A stretch of DNA of 64,000 nucleotides, taken from positions 62,001 to 126,000 of IMG/VR virus record IMGVR_UViG_3300017786_003484, one strand, 5' to 3'. Under the pieces are notes generated by a model. It did not search any database, was not told the origin of the DNA, and saw only the letters and a program-made list of their open reading frames with translations. A program made the translations under genes and the position numbers. Shown one piece after another: positions 22,784 to 54,381 of this stretch (position 1 is its first letter; the number at the start of each line of letters is the position of its first letter).

Positions 22784-24238
22784 ATGTCAGGAATATGTAC
22801 ATTAGAAATAAGAGATGAGGTAAACGTTCGTTTTCACGAGCTATCGCCGAGTACTCGACGATCGTGTGAAGCAAAATTAAAATATATGTTGCCTTATGCA
22901 TATCATGTACCAGCCTACAGGCTAGGAAGATGGGATGGTAAGATTGGATTTTTTACAGCCGCTGGATCAACGTATTTGAATTTGCTTGATCGAGTTTTAC
23001 CTATATTAGATAACGAAGGCTGGAGTGTTGAGCTTGTTGATAACAGAATTAAACATAGTTTCGAGTTTGAGCAAGTTACCGAAGACACTTTTTCTGGCAT
23101 TACTTGGCCTAAAGGACATGTTGCAGAAGGACAATCTATTAAACTTAGAGATTACCAGATAGAATGTATTAATAGGTTCCTTGCTAACCCGCATGGTGTA
23201 CAAGAAATAGCAACAGGTGCAGGTAAGACATTAATGACAGCCGCATTGAGCTTAATGTGCGAGCCTTACGGTAGAACGTTGGTAATTGTACCTAACAAAG
23301 ATTTAGTTAAGCAGACTCAAGAAGATTATATTAATTTAGGTTTAGATGTTGGTGTATTTTTTGGTGATGAAAAGGATGCAAATCATAAACATGTTATTGC
23401 TACATGGCAAAGCATAAATTCTTTAATTAAAAGATATAAAGATGGTAAGAGTAATGTTAGTATTGATATCTTAACAGATGATTTAATTTGTGTTATGGTA
23501 GACGAAGTACACATGGCAAAAGCAGATGTACTTCGTACAATGCTAACAGGTCCTTTTGCAAATATTCCTATTAGGTGGGGTTTAACAGGTACAATACCTA
23601 AAGAAGAACACGAATATATTAGTTTAATTTGTAGCCTAGGTGGAGTATTACATAGGCTACAGGCAAGCGAACTTCAAGATAAAGGTGTTCTGTCAAATTG
23701 CAATGTTAAGATATTGCAATATCAAGATAGTGTTGAATATAATAACTATCAAGAAGAACTGTCGTTTCTTACTACTAACAAGGAACGTATGACAGAGATA
23801 GCAAAGAAGATGGATACGATTAGTGATACAGGAAATACGTTGATATTAGTAGATCGGATTAAAACAGGTCAGATGCTAGAAGAAATGCTACCTGATTGTG
23901 TATTTGTATCTGGATCAATGAAAAGTAAAGATCGTAAAGCAGAATATAATGAAGTGCAGACACTAGACAATAAGATTATTGTTGCAACATACGGAGTTGC
24001 AAGTGTAGGCATTAATATACCTCGTATTTTTAACCTAGTATTAGTAGAACCGGGTAAGAGCTTTGTAAGAACTATTCAAAGTATAGGTAGAGGTATAAGA
24101 AAAGCAGAAGACAAGGACTTTGTACAGATATGGGATATTACTAGCAATGCAAAGTTCTCAAAAAGGCATCTAGGAAAACGAAAGAAGTTTTACGACGAAG
24201 CAAATTACCCACACGAAACACAGAAGGTAAAATATTAA
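22784..24238 (+). CDS. uvsW: SF2 DNA helicase UvsW
   Basis: LRDYQ Q-motif, ATGAGKT, MVDEVH, GLTGT, ATYGVASVGINIPRI, QSIGRGIRK. Confidence 0.92.
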   Translation: MSGICTLEIRDEVNVRFHELSPSTRRSCEAKLKYMLPYAYHVPAYRLGRWDGKIGFFTAAGSTYLNLLDRVLPILDNEGWSVELVDNRIKHSFEFEQVTEDTFSGITWPKGHVAEGQSIKLRDYQIECINRFLANPHGVQEIATGAGKTLMTAALSLMCEPYGRTLVIVPNKDLVKQTQEDYINLGLDVGVFFGDEKDANHKHVIATWQSINSLIKRYKDGKSNVSIDILTDDLICVMVDEVHMAKADVLRTMLTGPFANIPIRWGLTGTIPKEEHEYISLICSLGGVLHRLQASELQDKGVLSNCNVKILQYQDSVEYNNYQEELSFLTTNKERMTEIAKKMDTISDTGNTLILVDRIKTGQMLEEMLPDCVFVSGSMKSKDRKAEYNEVQTLDNKIIVATYGVASVGINIPRIFNLVLVEPGKSFVRTIQSIGRGIRKAEDKDFVQIWDITSNAKFSKRHLGKRKKFYDEANYPHETQKVKY

Positions 24239-25240: not shown

Positions 25241-25912
25241 ATGGGAAACGAATATCAGTGTAAATACTGTATGAAGAAGTTTGCTAGGGAACGTACTCTA
25301 TCAAGCCATATGTGTGAAAAGAAAAGAAGGTGGATGTCAATAGATGAACCTTCATCTAGAATTGCTTTTCAAGTTTGGTACGACTTCATGAAGTATGTTG
25401 CTCCACAGACAAAGAAGGAAAGAAGCACAGACGATTTTATTCGTAGCCCAGATTATATAGGTTTTGTAAAGTTTGCTAATTACATTATAGAACTTAGACC
25501 CAATGAAACAAATAAATTTATTAAATGGTTGTTTAAGCATAGTGTTAAACTTAGTAACTGGAATAAGAGAGAAACGTATTCTCTTTATATACAAGAAAGT
25601 AGTAAGACTGAAACGGTTGAACGAGCAGTAGAACGCATGGTGTTGTTAATGAAGTCATGGAGCGAAGAAACCGGAAATTCTTGGGAACAATACTTCCAGG
25701 AGGTACCAACAGCAACAGCCGTGAATTCGATAGTCATGGGAAGAATTAGTCCTTGGATCATATATTCGTCTAAGTCTGCACAAGATTTATTAGATAGAAT
25801 GGAACCAGGACAATTAGAGACGATAACAGGGAGCATAGACACAGAATGGTGGACAAGAAAAATCCAAAAGAGCCAGACGGAAGTGACTTGGTGCAACAAA
25901 ATTTTGAATTAA
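25241..25912 (+). CDS. Zinc-finger-containing hypothetical protein
   Basis: N-terminal YQCKYCMKKFARERTLSSHMC C2H/C motif. Confidence 0.7.
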   Translation: MGNEYQCKYCMKKFARERTLSSHMCEKKRRWMSIDEPSSRIAFQVWYDFMKYVAPQTKKERSTDDFIRSPDYIGFVKFANYIIELRPNETNKFIKWLFKHSVKLSNWNKRETYSLYIQESSKTETVERAVERMVLLMKSWSEETGNSWEQYFQEVPTATAVNSIVMGRISPWIIYSSKSAQDLLDRMEPGQLETITGSIDTEWWTRKIQKSQTEVTWCNKILN

Positions 25913-26055
25913 AACAACATGTTGATAATTTAGAAAAGCTAGAAACTAGAATTATGCTTTTTGACGAAAAACTTAGTTTATTAGCAAAAGAAATGATTGA
26001 TATGAAGAACAGACAAGAAGAGCTAATACAGATTATTAAGCAGGGATTAAGATGA
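25846..26055 (+). CDS. Small coiled-coil hypothetical protein
   Basis: 69 aa, heptad-like, overlaps flanking genes. Confidence 0.45.
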   Translation: MVDKKNPKEPDGSDLVQQNFELKQHVDNLEKLETRIMLFDEKLSLLAKEMIDMKNRQEELIQIIKQGLR

Positions 26056-26636
26056 GTAGGCCAGACGTAGATATCGACTTTGGTAACCGAGAAGAATTAT
26101 TGCATATACTAGATGGAGTTCCTGCGATGATTTCTACTAACCAAGGTGCAACTAAACATAAGACTGGAGTATACTTTCATCCAGTTTCAGTTGATCCATT
26201 TACTGGTTGGTGCAACCTAGATCATAAAGAAGCAGAAGATGTAGGGTTCTTTAAGTTAGACTTGCTTAATGTAAGTTTTTATTCTAAAGTAAAAGATAAA
26301 GAACAGTTAGATAAATTAATTGCTAAGGAGCCTATTTGGGAGTTATTAACACATGATGATTTTTCTAGTCAGCTCTTGCATGTCAACGGACACGGAGATA
26401 TACTTCGTGCAACAACTCCAACTTCTATTGAACAATTAGCCGCAGTATTAGCAATGATACGTCCTGCAAAACGTTATCTTATAAACAAGAATTGGGATAC
26501 TATAATGAAAGAGGTTTGGGTAAAACCTAAAACCGATGAATATTTCTTTAAGAAATCTCATGCAACAGCCTATGCTATTATGATTGTAGCACAGATGAAT
26601 CTACTATGCGAAGAACTAACTAATCCATCTTCTTAA
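26052..26636 (+). CDS. dnaE: Miniature family C DNA polymerase (DnaE palm/finger core only)
   Basis: PDVDIDF, HKTGVY, FFKLDLLNV, LAMIRPA and YFFKKSHATAYA are DnaE motifs, all within 194 aa. Confidence 0.85.
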   Translation: MSRPDVDIDFGNREELLHILDGVPAMISTNQGATKHKTGVYFHPVSVDPFTGWCNLDHKEAEDVGFFKLDLLNVSFYSKVKDKEQLDKLIAKEPIWELLTHDDFSSQLLHVNGHGDILRATTPTSIEQLAAVLAMIRPAKRYLINKNWDTIMKEVWVKPKTDEYFFKKSHATAYAIMIVAQMNLLCEELTNPSS

Positions 26637-26994
26637 CAAGACTAATTTGACGTCTTTTAGTTCTTTTTACAATTACATTTTCTAAACTAGTTAAATGTCC
26701 AGCCAACATTTCAAAATCTTTGGTGGCATATGTTTGTAAGCAATATGAAAAGTTTTTCATTGTAGTTCTAAGAACAATATTAATTGGTAGTAACCGATTA
26801 CTTCCCCACCACCATTCTTCACCTGCTTCAATAAATGCTAATTTCTCTTCTGATGTTTTTAAAAGGTCATACCGGTATACTGTAACAACAGTATTATCGC
26901 TATTTTGTATGATTCCGACAATTTCCTTATCTGCATAGCGAACTAAACTCATAAAAGGGAATTCTTCTAAAAATTGCTGTATTTTTGTATCCAT
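26620..26994 (-). CDS. Hypothetical protein
   Basis: Likely start ATG 26994 (MDTKIQQFLEEFPF), TAAATA on - strand at 27006-27011. Confidence 0.7.
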   Translation of the reverse strand: MDTKIQQFLEEFPFMSLVRYADKEIVGIIQNSDNTVVTVYRYDLLKTSEEKLAFIEAGEEWWWGSNRLLPINIVLRTTMKNFSYCLQTYATKDFEMLAGHLTSLENVIVKRTKRRQISLVKKMD

Positions 26995-27056
26995 ATTACT
27001 ACTTCTATTTAGTAGGAGGACCAGCCGGTTGTTTGTCGTAACTGATAAATAAACAT

Positions 27057-27863
27057 ATGGGAACATTAAACTCAACAGTCGCGAAAGCAAACTTAAACTA
27101 TGCAGGTGCTGGAACCGGTGCTTCGTTAACAAGACATCATGCTTCTTATACAGATAGAACTATTAGGTGGTTTCAAGGAGTTGATAATCTATTAGATTTA
27201 ACAATTTCTGGTAGTGATAGACGACCATTAAGTCTGCTACACAAAGAAGTCATGCTTATCCTATGGGATAACTACACCAGCACAACTATATTTAAAAGAC
27301 GTGCAATTCCAACAGTAGCAGAAAACGGAGAAGCAAGATTAACCATTTATGCAAGAGATTTAATGACCTCACCACCAGGACGTTATATGTTAAGTGCTAC
27401 AATAGTAGACGGTAGAGGTCTTGAAACAGCATTAACATGGGATCGTTCACAACGGGCTCATTGGGACGTTGAAATTATGGAGGCAGTAGTGCCAATAGGT
27501 AGATCTACCTTTGAAATTACAGAATGGCCTCAAGCAGTAACAGGAACAGATTCGTTTGCAAGTTCATCTACAAACGGTCCATCATATTATAGAAAAGATA
27601 CCAGTCTATTTTCATCAGCAATATATGCAAGTAACTTTACTGGAACAGTTATACTTCAAGGTACTTTAGATGATGTAATCACTGAAGATACTTTATGGGC
27701 AGATTTGGTTCCTCAAGATTCAAACACTCCGATAATTACATATACAGGATTCACAGGAATTGATCCATTCAATTATTATGCAGGCGTAAGATGGCTTCGT
27801 ACAATAATCACAACAGATGTCACTAATGCTGGTACATTAGATAAAATCCTAATTAGAGTATAA
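27057..27863 (+). CDS. Probable virion structural protein (Ig/BppU-like beta domains)
   Basis: Beta-rich, NLLDLTI..D..PL.L ... GEARLTI...L....GRY pattern; TAAATA at 27046-27051. Confidence 0.5.
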   Translation: MGTLNSTVAKANLNYAGAGTGASLTRHHASYTDRTIRWFQGVDNLLDLTISGSDRRPLSLLHKEVMLILWDNYTSTTIFKRRAIPTVAENGEARLTIYARDLMTSPPGRYMLSATIVDGRGLETALTWDRSQRAHWDVEIMEAVVPIGRSTFEITEWPQAVTGTDSFASSSTNGPSYYRKDTSLFSSAIYASNFTGTVILQGTLDDVITEDTLWADLVPQDSNTPIITYTGFTGIDPFNYYAGVRWLRTIITTDVTNAGTLDKILIRV

Positions 27864-28084: not shown

Positions 28085-29044
28085 ATGAATGTTGTAGAGT
28101 CTACACTCCGAGGTAATCTTCCTCCTTTAAAAACAAATAGTAGCGGTTGGCTGACTATGAATTGTCCTATGTGCATTCACAACGGAGAAAGCCGTCCTGA
28201 TTCAAAAGGAAGAGGCGGTTGGCGTTTTGATAATGACAAAACAGCATACCATTGTTTTAACTGTGGGTATACAACTGGTTGGCGACCTGGAAGTAAGTTA
28301 GGTTTCAAGTTAATTAAGTTGATGCGAATATTAGGCATTGACGAAGCTGAAATACAACGACTTAAAATTTTGTTATGGGATCAAGTTATTGAGGAAGTAG
28401 CAGAAGAAGAACAAGAAGTGTTTAATAAGGAATGGCCAGAAATTCCATATCCTTTTGAACTAACAGATTTAAGAGACGAGGCTGTTGAGTACCTAACAGG
28501 TAGAGGTATATTTGAATTAGCAAAGTGGGAGCAAACAGATCAAATAGGAATGAAACAACGTATTATTTTACCTTATACAGATAATTCAAAAGTAGTTGGT
28601 TATATGGCACGTTGGATAGGCGATCCTCCTAAAGGAACTGCTAAGATGTTAAGAAAGTCTCCAGATGAATTTGTTTTTAATTTAGATAAGCAACCAAAGA
28701 AACGTAAATATACAATAGTATGCGAAGGTGAATATGATGCCTTAGCAATAGGCGGTGTTGCCATACTATCTAATAAAATTAGCAAATATCAAGCACAACT
28801 AATTGAGGATTTAGATACAGAACCGGTAATGTTAGCAGACAAAGATCCAGGTGGCAAGTCGTTAGTTGAAGATGCAATTAACTTAGGATGGAATGTTAGT
28901 TTTCCAGACTGGCCAGCAGGAATAAAAGATGCAAATGAGGCAATATTGCATTTTGGAAGAGTAGCAACCTTGCAAAGTATATTAATGGCGATTGAACACT
29001 CGCCTTTGAAGGTTAAATTATTAATGAGGAGATGGTGTGTATAG
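28085..29044 (+). CDS. DNA primase (Zn ribbon + TOPRIM), gp61/DnaG-like
   Basis: CPMC...HCFNCG zinc ribbon; IVCEGEYDALAI, LADKDPGG, KDANE TOPRIM motifs. Confidence 0.9.
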   Translation: MNVVESTLRGNLPPLKTNSSGWLTMNCPMCIHNGESRPDSKGRGGWRFDNDKTAYHCFNCGYTTGWRPGSKLGFKLIKLMRILGIDEAEIQRLKILLWDQVIEEVAEEEQEVFNKEWPEIPYPFELTDLRDEAVEYLTGRGIFELAKWEQTDQIGMKQRIILPYTDNSKVVGYMARWIGDPPKGTAKMLRKSPDEFVFNLDKQPKKRKYTIVCEGEYDALAIGGVAILSNKISKYQAQLIEDLDTEPVMLADKDPGGKSLVEDAINLGWNVSFPDWPAGIKDANEAILHFGRVATLQSILMAIEHSPLKVKLLMRRWCV

Positions 29045-29270
29045 TTTAACGTTGATCTGGAAAGAAGGACAAAATGATAATGCCTTTTGGGAAGAGGTAA
29101 TCTTATGGATGACTACAGAATTTGGGTTACCCTCATATAAAGTAAGTAATTGGAAGGCTAGACCAATAACACGTTGGGCATATCAATCATCGCTAGACGA
29201 GATGAGATTTAAATTCCGTAATAAAGAAGACCAAATGTTAGCAAAACTTAGATGGGGCAATGATGGCTGA
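29037..29270 (+). CDS. Small hypothetical protein
   Basis: 77 aa; RFKFRNKEDQMLAKLRW; coupled between primase and helicase. Confidence 0.65.
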   Translation: MYSLTLIWKEGQNDNAFWEEVILWMTTEFGLPSYKVSNWKARPITRWAYQSSLDEMRFKFRNKEDQMLAKLRWGNDG

Positions 29271-30657
29271 AGATGAAATTAAAGAATATAGTTACGAATT
29301 ACAGAAACTTTTTTTAGAGTTTCTTATTTCTAGCAGGGACTTGGCGGCTAGGTGTAATAATGTATTAGATCCAGAATACTTTGATCGTAGATTGCGACCA
29401 GCGGCAAAATTTATTAAAGAATACATTACAGAACATAGTAACGTACCTGATGCAAAACAACTTTCAGCAATTACTACTATAGAAATACAGGAAATTGGCG
29501 ATAAAGCAGAAGAACATAAAAATTGGTTCTTAGATGAGTTTGAAGGATTTTCTAGACATAAAGCACTAGAAGGTGCAATTTTAACTAGTGCTGATTTGCT
29601 TGAAAAAAGTAATTATGGAGAGGTTGAAAATTTAATTAAGTCCGCAGTACAGGTTGGCCTTCCAAAAACATTTGGCACAAATTACTTTGAAAATCCTAAG
29701 TCCAGATTAGAAGGGCTTAAAGATGCAAATGGACAGTTAACAACCGGTTGGGCAACTGTTGATAATAAGCTATATGGTGGATTTAATAGAGGAGAACTAA
29801 ACATTTTTGCAGGTGCATCTGGTGCTGGTAAGAGTTTGTTTCTGCAGAACTTAGGATTAAACTGGGCAAAAGCAGGATTGAATACTGTCTACTTTAGTTT
29901 GGAGTTAAGTGAGGGGTTGTGTTCTATGAGAATGGATGCAATGCTAACCGGAACATCTACTAGAGATGTTTACAAGAAAATTGATGATATTGATTTAAAA
30001 GTTCGCATGATTGGAAAGAAAGCAGGATGTTTACAGATTGTACAGTTACCAAATAGTGTTACTGCCAACGATCTATTAGCATGGATTAGAGAGTTTCAAA
30101 CACAAAGGAAAGTACAAGTTGATGCAATACTTGTAGATTACTTAGACTTAATGATGCCAGCAGGACAAAAAATTAGTGTTGCTGATTTATATATTAAAGA
30201 TAAGATTGTTAGTGAGGAATTGAGAAACTTAGCAGTTACTGAAAATCTATTATTTGCAACTGCATCGCAGTTAAACAGAAGTGCAGTAGAAAGTGTTGAA
30301 TTTGACCATAGTATGATTGCTGGTGGTTTAAGTAAGATACAAACAGCAGATAATGTGTTTGGTATCTATAGCACTCCTAGTATGCGAGAAAGAAATAGAG
30401 TACAACTACAGTTTATGAAGACAAGAAGCAGTAGTGCAGTAGGACAAAAACTTGAATTAGACTTTGATCCAACAACATTACTAATTTCTGATTTAGCAGA
30501 AGATGCTGAACCGGTTGCAAGTTCAGCAACTACGGTGTTTAATAAATTGCATAAAACATCTAGTACAATAGTTTCGCCAGCAGAGCAACCACAAGCAACA
30601 TCTTCTTCTGTTAATAGGGATAAACTTAGAGGATTAGGATTAACGAGAGATGTCTAA
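29260..30657 (+). CDS. Replicative DnaB-like helicase (gp41-like)
   Basis: FAGASGAGKS, YFSLELSE, ILVDYLDLM, ELRNLA, ATASQLNRSA, GGLSKIQTADNVF, MKTRSS. Confidence 0.93.
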   Translation: MMAEDEIKEYSYELQKLFLEFLISSRDLAARCNNVLDPEYFDRRLRPAAKFIKEYITEHSNVPDAKQLSAITTIEIQEIGDKAEEHKNWFLDEFEGFSRHKALEGAILTSADLLEKSNYGEVENLIKSAVQVGLPKTFGTNYFENPKSRLEGLKDANGQLTTGWATVDNKLYGGFNRGELNIFAGASGAGKSLFLQNLGLNWAKAGLNTVYFSLELSEGLCSMRMDAMLTGTSTRDVYKKIDDIDLKVRMIGKKAGCLQIVQLPNSVTANDLLAWIREFQTQRKVQVDAILVDYLDLMMPAGQKISVADLYIKDKIVSEELRNLAVTENLLFATASQLNRSAVESVEFDHSMIAGGLSKIQTADNVFGIYSTPSMRERNRVQLQFMKTRSSSAVGQKLELDFDPTTLLISDLAEDAEPVASSATTVFNKLHKTSSTIVSPAEQPQATSSSVNRDKLRGLGLTRDV

Positions 30658-52834: not shown

Positions 52835-53920
52835 ATGCCGGCAAGAAATCATAGAAATTGGTTAAAGAAACCATTAGTAGAATATGTTAGTAGCGAAATA
52901 TATTCAAGTCAAGAAATATTTGAAGAAGAAATCGAAAGTATCTTTTCAAAGGTGTGGGTACCAGTATGCCACATCAGTGAAATGTATAACAAATTAGACT
53001 ATCGAACATCACAAATTGCTGGACATAATATTATTGTGTACAATACCGGAGATGGTGTACGAGCATATCGTAATTATGGCAGTTGGGCACCTACTGGAAC
53101 ATTGCAAGCACCTATTGTAACAGTTGAACCACAACTACATAGCGAAGTAAAGCACGGAGGTATGGTATGGGTAACACTTGATCCTAATCCTACACAGAGT
53201 GTTGAAGAGTGGACAGCAGGTGCATTTGATTGCATTGCTGATGCTATTGACACAGAAGAACTAGAAATTTTTCATTATCATAAAGCAATTATTCCTACCA
53301 ACTACAAACTATGGCATGATACTAACAGTGAATTCTATCATGACTTCATGCATTACTTTAATCGTGTAACTGGTTTCAACGATGAGTATTTTGCTAGAAA
53401 GAATATTCCCTTTGATAACGGGCATGTGAACGTTAGTAGTTTTACTGTAAATTATACAGAGTTTGATAAAGAAGGCGATAGAGGTGAACTAAGTTTTCCT
53501 AACTTACCTCCAAACCAATGGTATATGGTAGATTTGTTTCCTGGCTTTAACTTTAATTTACGTGGTAGTGCATATCGTTCAGATAGTGTTACGCCACTTG
53601 GACCAAATAGTGTACTAATAGAGTTTAGAGGATACGGTTTAAAGAAAGATACTCCAGAAGAAAGACAAACTCGTATTAAACATCATAATACTATCTGGGG
53701 ACCGTTTGGCAGAAACTTACATGAAGATCTTTTAGGTGTAACCGGGCAAGGAGCATCAATGTCTCCAGGCACAGAGAAAAGAAATATTTTACATGGAAGA
53801 CATGAAAATAGTACTATACATGATGAAGTTGGTATGCGTCACTACTATGCAGAATGGGGAAAATATATGGAGTTAGATCCTAGTAATCCAATAAAAGAGG
53901 TTGACAAAAAGGCCGCATAG
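52835..53920 (+). CDS. Ring-hydroxylating oxygenase alpha-subunit homolog lacking the Rieske cluster
   Basis: IFEEE.E.IFSKVWVPVCHISE, RAYRN, GGMVWVTL, NYKLWHDTNSEFYHDFMH, LFP, HEDL, RHYYAEW; no CxH/CxxH. Confidence 0.85.
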   Translation: MPARNHRNWLKKPLVEYVSSEIYSSQEIFEEEIESIFSKVWVPVCHISEMYNKLDYRTSQIAGHNIIVYNTGDGVRAYRNYGSWAPTGTLQAPIVTVEPQLHSEVKHGGMVWVTLDPNPTQSVEEWTAGAFDCIADAIDTEELEIFHYHKAIIPTNYKLWHDTNSEFYHDFMHYFNRVTGFNDEYFARKNIPFDNGHVNVSSFTVNYTEFDKEGDRGELSFPNLPPNQWYMVDLFPGFNFNLRGSAYRSDSVTPLGPNSVLIEFRGYGLKKDTPEERQTRIKHHNTIWGPFGRNLHEDLLGVTGQGASMSPGTEKRNILHGRHENSTIHDEVGMRHYYAEWGKYMELDPSNPIKEVDKKAA

Positions 53921-53929
53921 TGTTATAAA
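53901..53929 (+). promoter_or_regulatory. Promoter of tmRNA gene
   Basis: AAAGAGG-TTGACA-17 nt-TATAAA. Confidence 0.7.
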
Positions 53930-54023
53930 TATAATACAATGGTGAAGCATAACAAACGTTGTACAGGACTCGGGGGCAGTACCCGACGCCTCCACCATAA
54001 ACACACGAACGAGGAATGGAACT

Positions 54024-54209
54024 ATAAACAGTTTTAAAGATAAGTGTAGAATATTTTATATCGTTAAAGGTCATCTTAACGTATCTACACAAACAATAGA
54101 AGATTGTTACGATTATTATTTTAGAAGAATGTGGAATAATAACGAGTGTTACATATACGAAGAAGGTTTTGAAGAATCGTATCGTGTTTTTATGATGGGG
54201 GCGAAATAG
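54024..54209 (+). CDS. Putative 61-aa protein in the tmRNA intervening segment (not in ORF track)
   Basis: Stop-free frame (I/M)NSFKDKCRIFYIVKGHLNVSTQTIEDCYDYYFRRMWNNNECYIYEEGFEESYRVFMMGAK*; SD GAGGA 8 nt before an ATA; no in-frame ATG until codon 37. Confidence 0.55.
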   Translation: MNSFKDKCRIFYIVKGHLNVSTQTIEDCYDYYFRRMWNNNECYIYEEGFEESYRVFMMGAK

Positions 54210-54282
54210 GATCGACTGGCAAGTAGTAGGAATGTGGAGTTGTCCGGATGTAAGCTCGGTTAACGCGAACAAAACGATAATT

Positions 54283-54327
54283 GCAAACGATAATTTTGCA
54301 TCTGAGGATTTTGCCCTAGCGGCTTAG
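54283..54327 (+). other. tmRNA proteolysis-tag reading frame ANDNFASEDFALAA*
   Basis: GCA AAC GAT AAT TTT GCA TCT GAG GAT TTT GCC CTA GCG GCT TAG; ANDN start and ALAA end. Confidence 0.93.
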
Positions 54328-54381
54328 TTACTCTGGGCGGGTACTGCCTGGAAACAGAAGTGCCACTTAAAGTGAATAACA

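What the first reader, a model, noticed from the sequence alone, without database searches (positions are those of the whole stretch)
26052..26636. 194-aa minimal DnaE retaining all three catalytic aspartates
Bacterial DnaE is over 1000 aa. Here PDVDIDF (two Asp), H..G, KLDLL (third Asp), IRP and F.KSHA.AYA are compressed into one small ORF with no PHP, clamp-binding or OB domains, and no other DnaE pieces lie nearby. A DnaG-type primase is 1.5 kb away, so the mini-enzyme may be a primer extender, a second primase or a template-independent nucleotidyltransferase. The zinc-finger ORF at 25241 may be a partner. Similar short Pol III-alpha ORFs are, to my recollection, annotated in Rak2/GAP32-like phages, so the family may be known though poorly characterised.
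Basis: partly seen in the sequence, partly recalled or inferred. Interest (0 to 1): 0.65.

Follow-up and report, generated by a model that had tools for sequence, protein, structure and literature searches.

The report
Half of a split mini-DnaE polymerase
The 194-residue gene is real, but it is only the metal-binding half of a tiny two-gene version of the bacterial replicative polymerase core, a family described by sequence analysis in RaK2-like giant phages in 2021 and, as far as I could find, never tested at the bench.

Summary
They align in order with E. coli DnaE: D5/D7 = D401/D403, K68/D70 = K553/D555, R137 = R639, K168/H170/Y174 = K758/H760/Y764. It is not a self-sufficient mini-enzyme. 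The genome holds a second DnaE piece 115 kb downstream, outside the window: a 166-aa ORF matching PF07733 that carries the invariant nucleotide-binding loop WGVGRGSSVS. That ORF ends where the window ORF begins (E. coli 393 | 397). Both pieces occur in about 96 cultured jumbo phages, always as separate, distant genes. Co-folding gives ipSAE 0.90 against 0.00 for the best control, and puts the GRGSS loop on the PDVDIDF strand. No PHP, thumb, clamp-binding or OB part is found anywhere in the 244-kb record. Iyer et al. 2021 (PMC7824862) already described this split minimal Pol III alpha in group 2.2 jumbo phages, next to a family B polymerase. This copy is a new marine member, at most 47% identical to any isolate. 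Relatives have a family B polymerase. This record has none, but it is only 74% complete. I found no published biochemistry.

The parts
26052..26636 (+). C-terminal subunit (194 aa) of the split minimal Pol III alpha. It holds the Mg-binding palm strands (D5, D7, D70) and a reduced finger (R137, K168, H170, Y174).
   Evidence: phrog_11778 E = 1.4e-59. Invariant residues. Ordered alignment with E. coli DnaE 399-420, 596-641 and 752-767. Top Foldseek hits are all Pol III alpha, but weak (E = 0.09-1). Its partner, the N-terminal subunit (166 aa, PF07733 E = 1e-9, phrog_11127 E = 1.6e-45), lies outside the window at G000:C1:203841-204341 (+) = L001:1258-1758.
25241..25912 (+). 223-aa ORF with an N-terminal C2H2-like zinc finger (phrog_11058). 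A conserved upstream neighbour of unknown function.
   Evidence: phrog_11058 E = 3.3e-59. Weak zf-C2H2_2 match, E = 5.7e-4, below Pfam's cut-off. Present upstream of the C piece in 66 of 67 eligible IMG/VR loci, and in the Ettore and CBB phages.
25846..26055 (+). Small ORF (69 aa, or 54 aa from a later start) whose stop overlaps the start of the C piece. Not a conserved part of the system.
   Evidence: No family hit. tblastn finds it only in loci whose C piece is 84% identical or more. Absent in Ettore.
26620..26994 (-). Convergent 124-aa ORF (phrog_11637, unknown function) overlapping the 3' end of the C piece. The most constant neighbour.
   Evidence: phrog_11637 E = 9.8e-32. Found downstream on the opposite strand in 72 of 72 eligible loci. 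Gene callers give 124 aa.
27057..27863 (+). 268-aa ORF with a weak match to a virion structural protein family.
   Evidence: phrog_14467 E = 5.4e-10. Present in 57 of 69 loci.
28085..29044 (+). DnaG/T4 gp61-type DNA primase.
   Evidence: phrog_47 E = 5.2e-30. Present in 64 of 64 loci.
29260..30657 (+). DnaB-like replicative helicase.
   Evidence: PF03796 E = 3e-16 and phrog_19 E = 2.9e-65. Present in 60 of 61 loci.
22784..24238 (+). UvsW-like SF2 DNA helicase at the head of the conserved module.
   Evidence: ResIII and Helicase_C domains, phrog_16 E = 2.9e-77. Present in 50 of 59 loci.

Best explanation
The ORF encodes the C-terminal half of a two-subunit, minimal family-C (Pol III alpha/DnaE-like) nucleotidyltransferase of a marine T4-related jumbo phage. 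The DnaE palm is cut between E. coli residues 393 and 397.

The 166-aa N piece lies 115 kb downstream, three genes before the clamp loader. It supplies the helical subdomain with the GRGSS loop, which in DnaE holds the triphosphate of the incoming nucleotide. The 194-aa C piece lies in the primase/helicase module. It supplies the beta strands with the three metal-binding aspartates and a reduced finger with the R639, K758, H760 and Y764 equivalents.

The two polypeptides most likely assemble non-covalently into one active site of about 360 residues. That assembly has no PHP domain, essentially no thumb, and no clamp-binding or OB domain.

Shown: homology, the exact split point, co-occurrence of the two genes, conservation of catalytic residues, and the absence of the other domains. 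Supported in silico only: the heterodimer. Inferred: that it polymerises DNA as an accessory enzyme beside the phage's family B replicase, for example in primer extension, one strand, or repair, as Iyer et al. proposed. With no thumb and no clamp contact it is probably distributive or depends on other proteins.
For: Second piece:
- PF07733 positions 12-95, E = 1.3e-10, at G000:C1:204084-204338. As a whole protein, E = 1e-9.
- It ends ...DMKEFFK*, and the C piece starts MSRPDVDIDF.
- The N-piece profile aligns to E. coli DnaE 322-392 and the C-piece profile to 399-420.
- All 33 aligned N pieces end at the same ...EF[IF][KR].

Co-occurrence:
- The C piece is in 96 phage records. The N piece is in 100, which are the same genera plus 4 Clostridium phages.
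- The two genes are always 30-180 kb apart.
- Both pieces occur on the same 332,645-bp and 166,776-bp contigs.
- 0 of 80 IMG/VR loci have the N piece within 8 kb of the C piece.
- The two most complete IMG/VR relatives have both pieces.
- There is one copy of each piece in this genome.

Never fused: 76 of 76 complete C-piece frames are 180-235 codons from stop to stop.

Assembly:
- ipSAE 0.90, 0.90 and 0.91 in three runs, best of 3 controls 0.00. This mark was reached by 58 of 80 solved complexes and 2 of 110 mismatched pairs. The runs agree in at least 92% of contacts, and the partner's pLDDT is at least 90.
- N-piece residues 127-141 (GRGSS loop) touch C-piece residues 4-11 (PDVDIDF).
- Folded alone, C-piece residues 1-70 have pLDDT below 50, while the finger helices reach 80-94.

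Published description of exactly this arrangement: PMC7824862.

Context:
- UvsW-like helicase, primase and DnaB surround the C piece.
- A clamp loader (phrog_168, E = 3.8e-76) lies three genes after the N piece, as in CBB and Ettore.

Presence in RNA libraries: contigs 100% identical to the C piece in 4 marine metatranscriptome runs.
Against: - No biochemical data exist for any member.
- The complex prediction can be 'from memory', because full-length DnaE structures contain the same contact within one chain. My own alignments were used, so the calibration counts hold only roughly.
- The single-chain and co-fold confidences come from different predictors.
- Sequence matches of the C piece to solved DnaE structures are weak (profile E = 0.003), and Foldseek E-values are 0.09-1.
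- Loss of the thumb and the duplex-binding domains leaves it open whether primer-template DNA can be held at all.
- The RNA-library contigs do not exclude DNA carry-over.
Confidence: 0.85

Rival explanations
1. One reading: the 194-aa protein is an autonomous minimal polymerase, primase or terminal transferase that needs no other DnaE part.
For: All three catalytic aspartates and the finger motifs are in this one ORF and are invariant. It is a tightly conserved standalone gene next to a primase.
Against: It lacks the GRGS triphosphate-binding subdomain, which is encoded separately and co-occurs with it in every complete genome examined. Its palm part is not confidently folded alone. Co-folding with the N piece scores 0.90 against 0.00 for controls.
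Confidence: 0.05
2. The two pieces are joined after transcription or translation into one polypeptide, by a split intein as in cyanobacterial DnaE, or by trans-splicing of a group I intron.
For: DnaE is the classic host of a natural split intein (established knowledge). A Clostridium phage DnaE is interrupted at the same site by an HNH homing endonuclease gene.
Against: There is no room for intein halves. The N piece stops right after the residue that aligns with E. coli 393, and the C piece starts 3 residues before PDxDxDF. Both genes abut or overlap their neighbours: the ATGA overlap at 26052, and the next ORF starts on the N piece's last base. Rfam finds no intron in the window, L001 or L107.
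Confidence: 0.03
3. The heterodimer is a nucleotidyltransferase, but not a template-directed DNA polymerase. It might add untemplated nucleotides, make a nucleotide signal or a modified nucleotide, or serve as a non-catalytic scaffold in the replisome.
For: The thumb, most of the fingers and all duplex- and clamp-binding domains are gone: about 100 residues between E. coli 406 and 507, about 88 between 639 and 756, and everything after about 780. The Pol-beta-like fold is used by many non-polymerase transferases (established knowledge).
Against: The retained finger motifs are DnaE-specific, and in DnaE they contact the incoming dNTP and the template. They are invariant. Both genes sit in replication modules.
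Confidence: 0.15
4. The pieces are decaying remnants of a fragmented, host-derived dnaE with no present function.
For: Both are short compared with the 1,160 aa of E. coli DnaE. The CBB paper called the N piece 'truncated'.
Against: There are thousands of homologues of uniform length with invariant catalytic residues across 36-100% identity. All 76 complete frames are intact. Gene order is conserved.
Confidence: 0.02

Closest known systems
Split minimal DNA polymerase III alpha of group 2.2 jumbo phages (Iyer, Anantharaman, Krishnan, Burroughs & Aravind 2021, Viruses 13:63; e.g. CBB gp287 + gp328, GAP32, RaK2, PA5oct-like phages, Atu_ph07)
   Same: Same two PHROG families (phrog_11778 and phrog_11127). 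Same split point. The two genes are distant from each other. Same neighbours: Zn-finger ORF, primase and DnaB for the C piece, clamp loader for the N piece. No other Pol III domains.
   Different: At most 47% (C piece) and 52% (N piece) identical to any cultured phage. Marine metagenomic lineage. The two genes are 115 kb apart. No family B polymerase was found in the incomplete record.
Bacterial replicative DnaE / Pol III alpha (E. coli, 1,160 aa)
   Same: Homologous Pol-beta-like palm with D401/D403/D555, the G361-R-G-S364 loop, and the R639, K758, H760 and Y764 equivalents.
   Different: Two polypeptides, 360 aa in all. No PHP domain, almost no thumb, a truncated finger, and no beta-clamp-binding, OB or tau-binding domain.
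DnaE of Clostridium phage CS266P3 (OP172777.1): two ORFs separated by an I-HmuI-like HNH endonuclease gene
   Same: Cut at the same place. The 402-aa ORF ends ...KLDFSRFMR+8 residues, and the 508-aa ORF starts MDIDVDF. The N piece aligns to residues 318-394 of the 402-aa ORF with 97% hhalign probability.
   Different: The halves are adjacent, keep a PHP-like N-terminus and a long C-terminal part, and have a homing endonuclease between them. The C-piece profile matches the 508-aa ORF only weakly.
Cyanobacterial split-intein DnaE (dnaE-n / dnaE-c)
   Same: A family C polymerase encoded by two distant genes (established knowledge).
   Different: There the halves carry intein parts and are ligated by protein trans-splicing at another site. 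Here no intein sequence is present.

Membership tests
Split minimal Pol III alpha of group 2.2 jumbo phages, C-terminal subunit (phrog_11778) | Full-length sequence match to the family profile | tested here: met
   phrog_11778 E = 1.4e-59, residues 3-189 on profile positions 6-195 of 197. 96 phage records match at 32-47% identity over at least 80% of the length.
Split minimal Pol III alpha of group 2.2 jumbo phages, C-terminal subunit (phrog_11778) | Standalone ORF of about 190-200 aa beginning a few residues before PDxDxDF | tested here: met
   194 aa, MSRPDVDIDF. 76 of 76 related complete frames are 180-235 codons from stop to stop.
Split minimal Pol III alpha of group 2.2 jumbo phages, C-terminal subunit (phrog_11778) | A separate, distantly encoded N-terminal NTP-binding subunit in the same genome | tested here: met
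   166-aa ORF at G000:C1:203841-204341, PF07733 E = 1e-9, phrog_11127 E = 1.6e-45, 115,205 bp downstream.
Split minimal Pol III alpha of group 2.2 jumbo phages, C-terminal subunit (phrog_11778) | Mg-binding aspartates and template/dNTP-binding finger residues conserved | tested here: met
   D5, D7, D9, K68, D70, R137, K167, H170 and Y174 are invariant, and K168 nearly so. They map to E. coli D401, D403, D405, K553, D555, R639, N757, K758, H760 and Y764.
Split minimal Pol III alpha of group 2.2 jumbo phages, C-terminal subunit (phrog_11778) | The two subunits associate to rebuild one active site | tested here: inconclusive
   In silico only. ipSAE 0.90 against 0.00 for the best control, a mark reached by 58 of 80 solved complexes and 2 of 110 mismatched pairs. 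Contacts agree in at least 92% across runs, and the partner's pLDDT is at least 90. The pass may reflect memory of intact DnaE structures. No physical test was possible.
Split minimal Pol III alpha of group 2.2 jumbo phages, C-terminal subunit (phrog_11778) | The genome also encodes a T4-type family B replicase | tested here: inconclusive
   PF00136 finds nothing, tblastn with six relatives' PolB finds nothing, and there are no A/B/C motifs in the 244-kb record. The record is 74% complete. Relatives have PolB in the cyclic order C piece, N piece, PolB, and collinearity with G004 ends at 215.6 kb.
Split minimal Pol III alpha of group 2.2 jumbo phages, C-terminal subunit (phrog_11778) | DNA polymerase activity | not testable with these tools
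   No biochemical report was found.
Bacterial replicative DnaE (Pol III alpha, family C) | N-terminal PHP domain | tested here: not met
   PF02811 has no match in the whole record, and the controls ring in 14 of 14 genomes.
Bacterial replicative DnaE (Pol III alpha, family C) | Complete palm (PF07733) in one polypeptide | tested here: not met
   Only profile positions 12-95 of 260 match, and they match in the other gene. The window ORF itself has no Pfam hit.
Bacterial replicative DnaE (Pol III alpha, family C) | Thumb and full finger domains | tested here: not met
   PF17657 has no match. There are 26 residues between D9 and H36, against 105 between E. coli D405 and H511. There are 28 between R137 and F166, against 116 between R639 and F756.
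Bacterial replicative DnaE (Pol III alpha, family C) | Beta-clamp-binding and OB-fold C-terminal domains | tested here: not met
   The protein ends 20 residues after the Y764 equivalent. phrog_405 (1,190 positions) matches nothing beyond position 809 anywhere in the genome.
Split-intein DnaE | Intein N and C halves flanking the split | tested here: not met
   The N piece ends right after the residue aligned to E. coli 393. The C piece has 3 residues before PDxDxDF.

The most novel reading that the evidence does not exclude
In this marine lineage the two-gene, 360-residue mini Pol III alpha is not an accessory enzyme. It would be a self-sufficient heterodimeric DNA polymerase, the smallest family C polymerase known. 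No family B or A polymerase is found in 244 kb, so it might even be the phage's only polymerase. It would work directly with the adjacent primase/DnaB module and with the clamp loader next to the N piece.
Probability: 0.06. Interest if true: 0.8.

Novelty: new member of a known kind. Interest (0 to 1): 0.3.

Why it matters
The family is abundant: at least 6,500 protein clusters for the C piece, about 96 cultured jumbo phages of Escherichia, Klebsiella, Pseudomonas, Erwinia and other hosts, and marine metagenomes from a dozen or more studies. It strips the bacterial replicative polymerase down to roughly its catalytic core and divides that core between two genes.

If the pair is active, it would define the minimal requirements of a family C polymerase. 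It would also give a tractable model for how the Pol-beta-like palm of DnaE works. It would raise the question of why T4-like giant phages keep a second, unrelated polymerase.

For this scan the main value is a correction. The ORF should be annotated as 'Pol III alpha-like polymerase, C-terminal (metal-binding) subunit' and paired with the N-terminal subunit gene. It should not be called a complete mini-DnaE.

Tried and rejected
- Pfam on the ORF: no hit, even at E = 1.
- phmmer of either piece against PDB sequences: nothing significant. The profile of the C piece reaches only E = 0.003, although its three segments align in order.
- Foldseek on both single-chain models: the top hits are Pol III alpha, but none has E at or below 0.001.
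- hhalign of the C-piece profile against the Clostridium phage 508-aa ORF aligned only the KSH motif, because the profile has little diversity.
- Low-confidence hhalign of N-piece residues 28-92 to E. coli 221-286: not used.
- Other polymerase parts in the genome (PHP, finger, family B, family A, RNase_T/DnaQ): all negative.
- Ten large unannotated ORFs scanned in Pfam, and a partly overlapping set of ten in PHROGs. They are tail, baseplate, ClpB-like, collagen-like and RNR proteins or have no match. None is a polymerase.
- tblastn with six PolB proteins and a motif scan: negative.
- I tried to reach the 301,738-bp contig that carries a 98%-identical C piece, to settle the PolB question.
- Intron search in Rfam at gathering score and at E = 1: nothing relevant.
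- Literature searches for experimental work returned only the 2021 comparative paper and genome notes.
- Complex prediction was busy four times before it ran. One genome search failed and was repeated. One paper search was malformed. Two of my scripts stopped on a sorting error after printing the needed numbers.
- Not run: the exhaustive representative-protein search. The family was not left open, so I make no claim that a fused single-chain mini form is absent outside the data examined.

Full report
**The observation.** The window is bases 62001-126000 of a 244,432-bp linear IMG/VR virus record that CheckV rates 74% complete. The ORF 26052..26636 (+) is real. It is 194 aa long, and its ATG overlaps the stop of the upstream small ORF (ATGA). 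It contains PDVDIDF, H36..G39, K68-L-D70-L-L, I-R137-P and F-K-K-S-H170-A-T-A-Y174-A. Pfam gives no hit. PHROGs gives a full-length match to phrog_11778 'DNA polymerase' (E = 1.4e-59) and a weak match to the 1,190-position DnaE family phrog_405. The word search finds 6,532 homologous 90%-clusters; the 120 listed are 191-199 aa, apart from one 124-aa fragment. In alignments spanning 36-100% identity, D5, D7, D9, H36, G39, K68, D70, R137, P138, F166, K167, H170 and Y174 never vary.

**Mapping to DnaE.** I took E. coli dnaE from NC_000913.3 and aligned the family profiles to it.
- P4-D5-V-D7-I-D9-F = P400-D401-F-D403-V-D405-F.
- K68-L-D70 = K553-F-D555.
- R137-P138 = R639-P640.
- F166/K168/S169/H170/Y174 = F756/K758/S759/H760/Y764.

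D401, D403 and D555 are the catalytic carboxylates of E. coli Pol III alpha (established knowledge, Pritchard & McHenry 1999). They are D5, D7 and D70, and D9 is a further invariant Asp.

Large parts of DnaE are missing from this ORF. Only 26 residues separate D9 and H36, against 105 between E. coli D405 and H511. That region holds the thumb by the published domain limits (knowledge, Lamers 2006). Only 28 residues separate R137 and F166, against 116 in E. coli. The protein stops 20 residues after the Y764 equivalent, so most of the fingers and all of the clamp-binding and OB parts are missing. A profile search of PDB sequences gives three segments that align in order with M. tuberculosis DnaE1, but only E = 0.003.

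**The missing half exists.** Searching the whole record with PF07733 finds one further piece at G000:C1:204084-204338 (E = 1.3e-10, profile positions 12-95 of 260). It is a 166-aa ORF (L001:1258-1758; genome 203841-204341, + strand) lying 115,205 bp downstream of the window ORF and outside the window. It matches phrog_11127 'DNA polymerase' (E = 1.6e-45).
- It carries the invariant W-G-V-G-R135-G-S137-S-V-S, equal to E. coli G359-P-G-R362-G363-S364.
- It ends ...DMKEFFK*, aligned to E. coli ...LLFERFLN393. The window ORF starts at the equivalent of residue 397.
- All 33 aligned homologues stop at the same point.
- A six-frame motif scan finds exactly one genuine PDxDxDF site and one GxGRGS in the genome.

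The palm is therefore cleanly divided between two genes. The window ORF lacks the nucleotide-binding subdomain.

**The two genes belong together.** tblastn finds the C piece in 96 phage records and the N piece in 100. These are the same genera with the same counts (Escherichia 34/34, Pseudomonas 11/11, Erwinia 8/8, Salmonella 8/8 and others), plus four Clostridium phages. The two genes are always 30-180 kb apart. Both families occur on the same 332,645-bp and 166,776-bp metagenomic contigs. Among 13 long IMG/VR relatives, the two most complete (51% and 61%) carry both pieces, 72-160 kb apart. In 80 IMG/VR loci the N piece is never within 8 kb of the C piece. In 76 of 76 complete cases the C-piece reading frame is only 180-235 codons from stop to stop, so it is never fused to anything.

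**Predicted assembly.** AlphaFold2 on the C piece alone gives pLDDT below 50 for residues 1-13, 21-25, 36-62 and 64-69, which are the palm strands. It gives 80-94 for the finger helices. The N piece alone folds with mean pLDDT 81.6. The best Foldseek hits of both models are Pol III alpha chains, but with weak E-values of 0.09-1.

Co-folding the two chains gives ipSAE 0.90, 0.90 and 0.91, against 0.00 for the best of three controls. This mark was reached by 58 of 80 solved complexes and by 2 of 110 mismatched pairs. The runs agree in at least 92% of contacts, and the partner's pLDDT is at least 90. N-piece residues 127-141, the GRGSS loop, touch C-piece residues 4-11, the PDVDIDF strand. This is the geometry expected of a DnaE active site.

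There are caveats. The same contact exists within one chain in solved DnaE structures, so the pass may be from memory. My own alignments were used, so the calibration counts hold only roughly. The single-chain and complex models come from different predictors.

**Already published.** Iyer, Anantharaman, Krishnan, Burroughs and Aravind (Viruses 2021, 13:63; PMC7824862) describe the arrangement in their 'group 2.2' jumbo phages. [quoted passage not shown] It accompanies a family B polymerase. They suggest it may cooperate with that enzyme in synthesis of one strand or in repair. The CBB genome paper had earlier noted the N piece as a 'truncated' Pol III alpha. I found no experimental study.

**Surroundings.** The C piece lies in a conserved replication module. 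The order is: UvsW-like helicase (22784..24238), two small ORFs, the 223-aa zinc-finger ORF (25241..25912, phrog_11058), a small ORF, the C piece, a convergent 124-aa ORF (26620..26994, phrog_11637), a 268-aa ORF, the DnaG-type primase (28085..29044) and DnaB (29260..30657).
- The same order is annotated in Phosso, Ettore and CBB.
- It also holds in IMG/VR loci: zinc-finger ORF 66/67, phrog_11637 ORF 72/72, primase 64/64, DnaB 60/61.
- The 69-aa ORF at 25846 is seen only in relatives whose C piece is at least 84% identical.
- Because the whole module is inherited together, this synteny is only weak evidence that the zinc-finger protein is a partner. That idea stays untested.
- The N piece lies three genes upstream of the clamp loader (phrog_168, E = 3.8e-76), as in CBB and Ettore.

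**Family B polymerase.** Phosso, Ettore and CBB have a PF00136 polymerase, and so do the two most complete IMG/VR relatives. This record has none. PF00136 and PF00476 find nothing. tblastn with six relatives' PolB finds nothing. No polymerase B motifs are present. None of the large unassigned ORFs is a polymerase. In the relatives the cyclic gene order is C piece, N piece, PolB, with PolB 25-48 kb after the N piece. This record is collinear with relative G004 only up to 215.6 kb and ends at 244.4 kb. The polymerase may therefore lie in the missing quarter of the genome. This is unresolved.

**No splicing.** The N piece ends, and the C piece begins, within a residue or two of the aligned DnaE sequence. 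There is no room for intein halves. Both genes abut or overlap their neighbours. Rfam finds no intron. The products are most likely two separate polypeptides.

**Habitat and expression.** Near-identical DNA is held by runs from a dozen or more marine and seawater studies. Contigs 100% identical to parts of the C piece occur in four marine metatranscriptome runs. One of them is a 1,000-nt contig running from the zinc-finger ORF into the C piece. DNA carry-over is not excluded, and contigs do not prove a single transcript.

**Verdict.** The ORF is the C-terminal, metal-binding subunit of a two-gene minimal Pol III alpha. This family is known from comparative genomics but has not been characterised at the bench. 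This copy is a new marine member, at most 47% identical to any isolate. Function beyond 'DnaE-like nucleotidyltransferase core, probably an accessory DNA polymerase' remains inference.

Noticed in passing
window 53897..54367 (+): A phage-borne permuted (two-piece) tmRNA of the alphaproteobacterial type: RF01849 at 101 bits and RF04321 at 106 bits. ARAGORN reports no tRNA or tmRNA in the window. The genome has 35.6% G+C and is of marine origin, and the nearest cultured relatives infect Agrobacterium and Sinorhizobium. Together this hints at a marine alphaproteobacterial host.
   Followed up: partly
L107:4047-7613 (Clostridium phage CS266P3, OP172777.1): A larger phage DnaE is cut at the same site as the jumbo-phage mini enzyme. 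A 402-aa ORF ends ...KLDFSRFMR plus 8 residues. An I-HmuI-like HNH endonuclease gene follows. Then a 508-aa ORF starts MDIDVDF. No group I intron was detected. This suggests that the active-site DNA is a homing site, and that the split of the mini enzyme may descend from such an insertion.
   Followed up: partly
G000:C1 whole record (1-244432): No family B or family A DNA polymerase and no DnaQ-like exonuclease anywhere in the record. Relatives carry a family B polymerase, and CBB and RsoM2USA also carry a DnaQ-like epsilon subunit. The record is 74% complete.
   Followed up: partly
L001:624-995 and L001:2207-2569 (genome 203207-203578 and 204790-205152): Beside the N piece lie an IscA/HesB-type iron-sulphur cluster protein (PF01521, E = 3.7e-11) and a gp31/GroES-like 'head morphogenesis' protein (phrog_931). 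The latter keeps the same position in CBB.
   Followed up: no
genome 213415-219074 (L007, L008): A ClpB-like double AAA+ chaperone (737 aa) is followed by a 770-aa protein with collagen triple-helix repeats. Collinearity with relative G004 ends just after the ClpB-like gene.
   Followed up: no
window 26620..27132 (-): The convergent ORF that overlaps the 3' end of the C piece by 17 bases (phrog_11637, unknown function) is the most constant neighbour, present in 72 of 72 loci. The ORF listing extends it to 170 aa from a TTG, but gene callers in relatives give 124 aa.
   Followed up: partly
L014:1-1601 and L017/L022 (Pseudomonas phage Ettore): In Ettore the family B polymerase matches fall in two open frames of 825 and 379 aa, about 2.5 kb apart. 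A homing endonuclease is annotated in its replication module. Polymerase genes in this phage group seem to be interrupted repeatedly.
   Followed up: no
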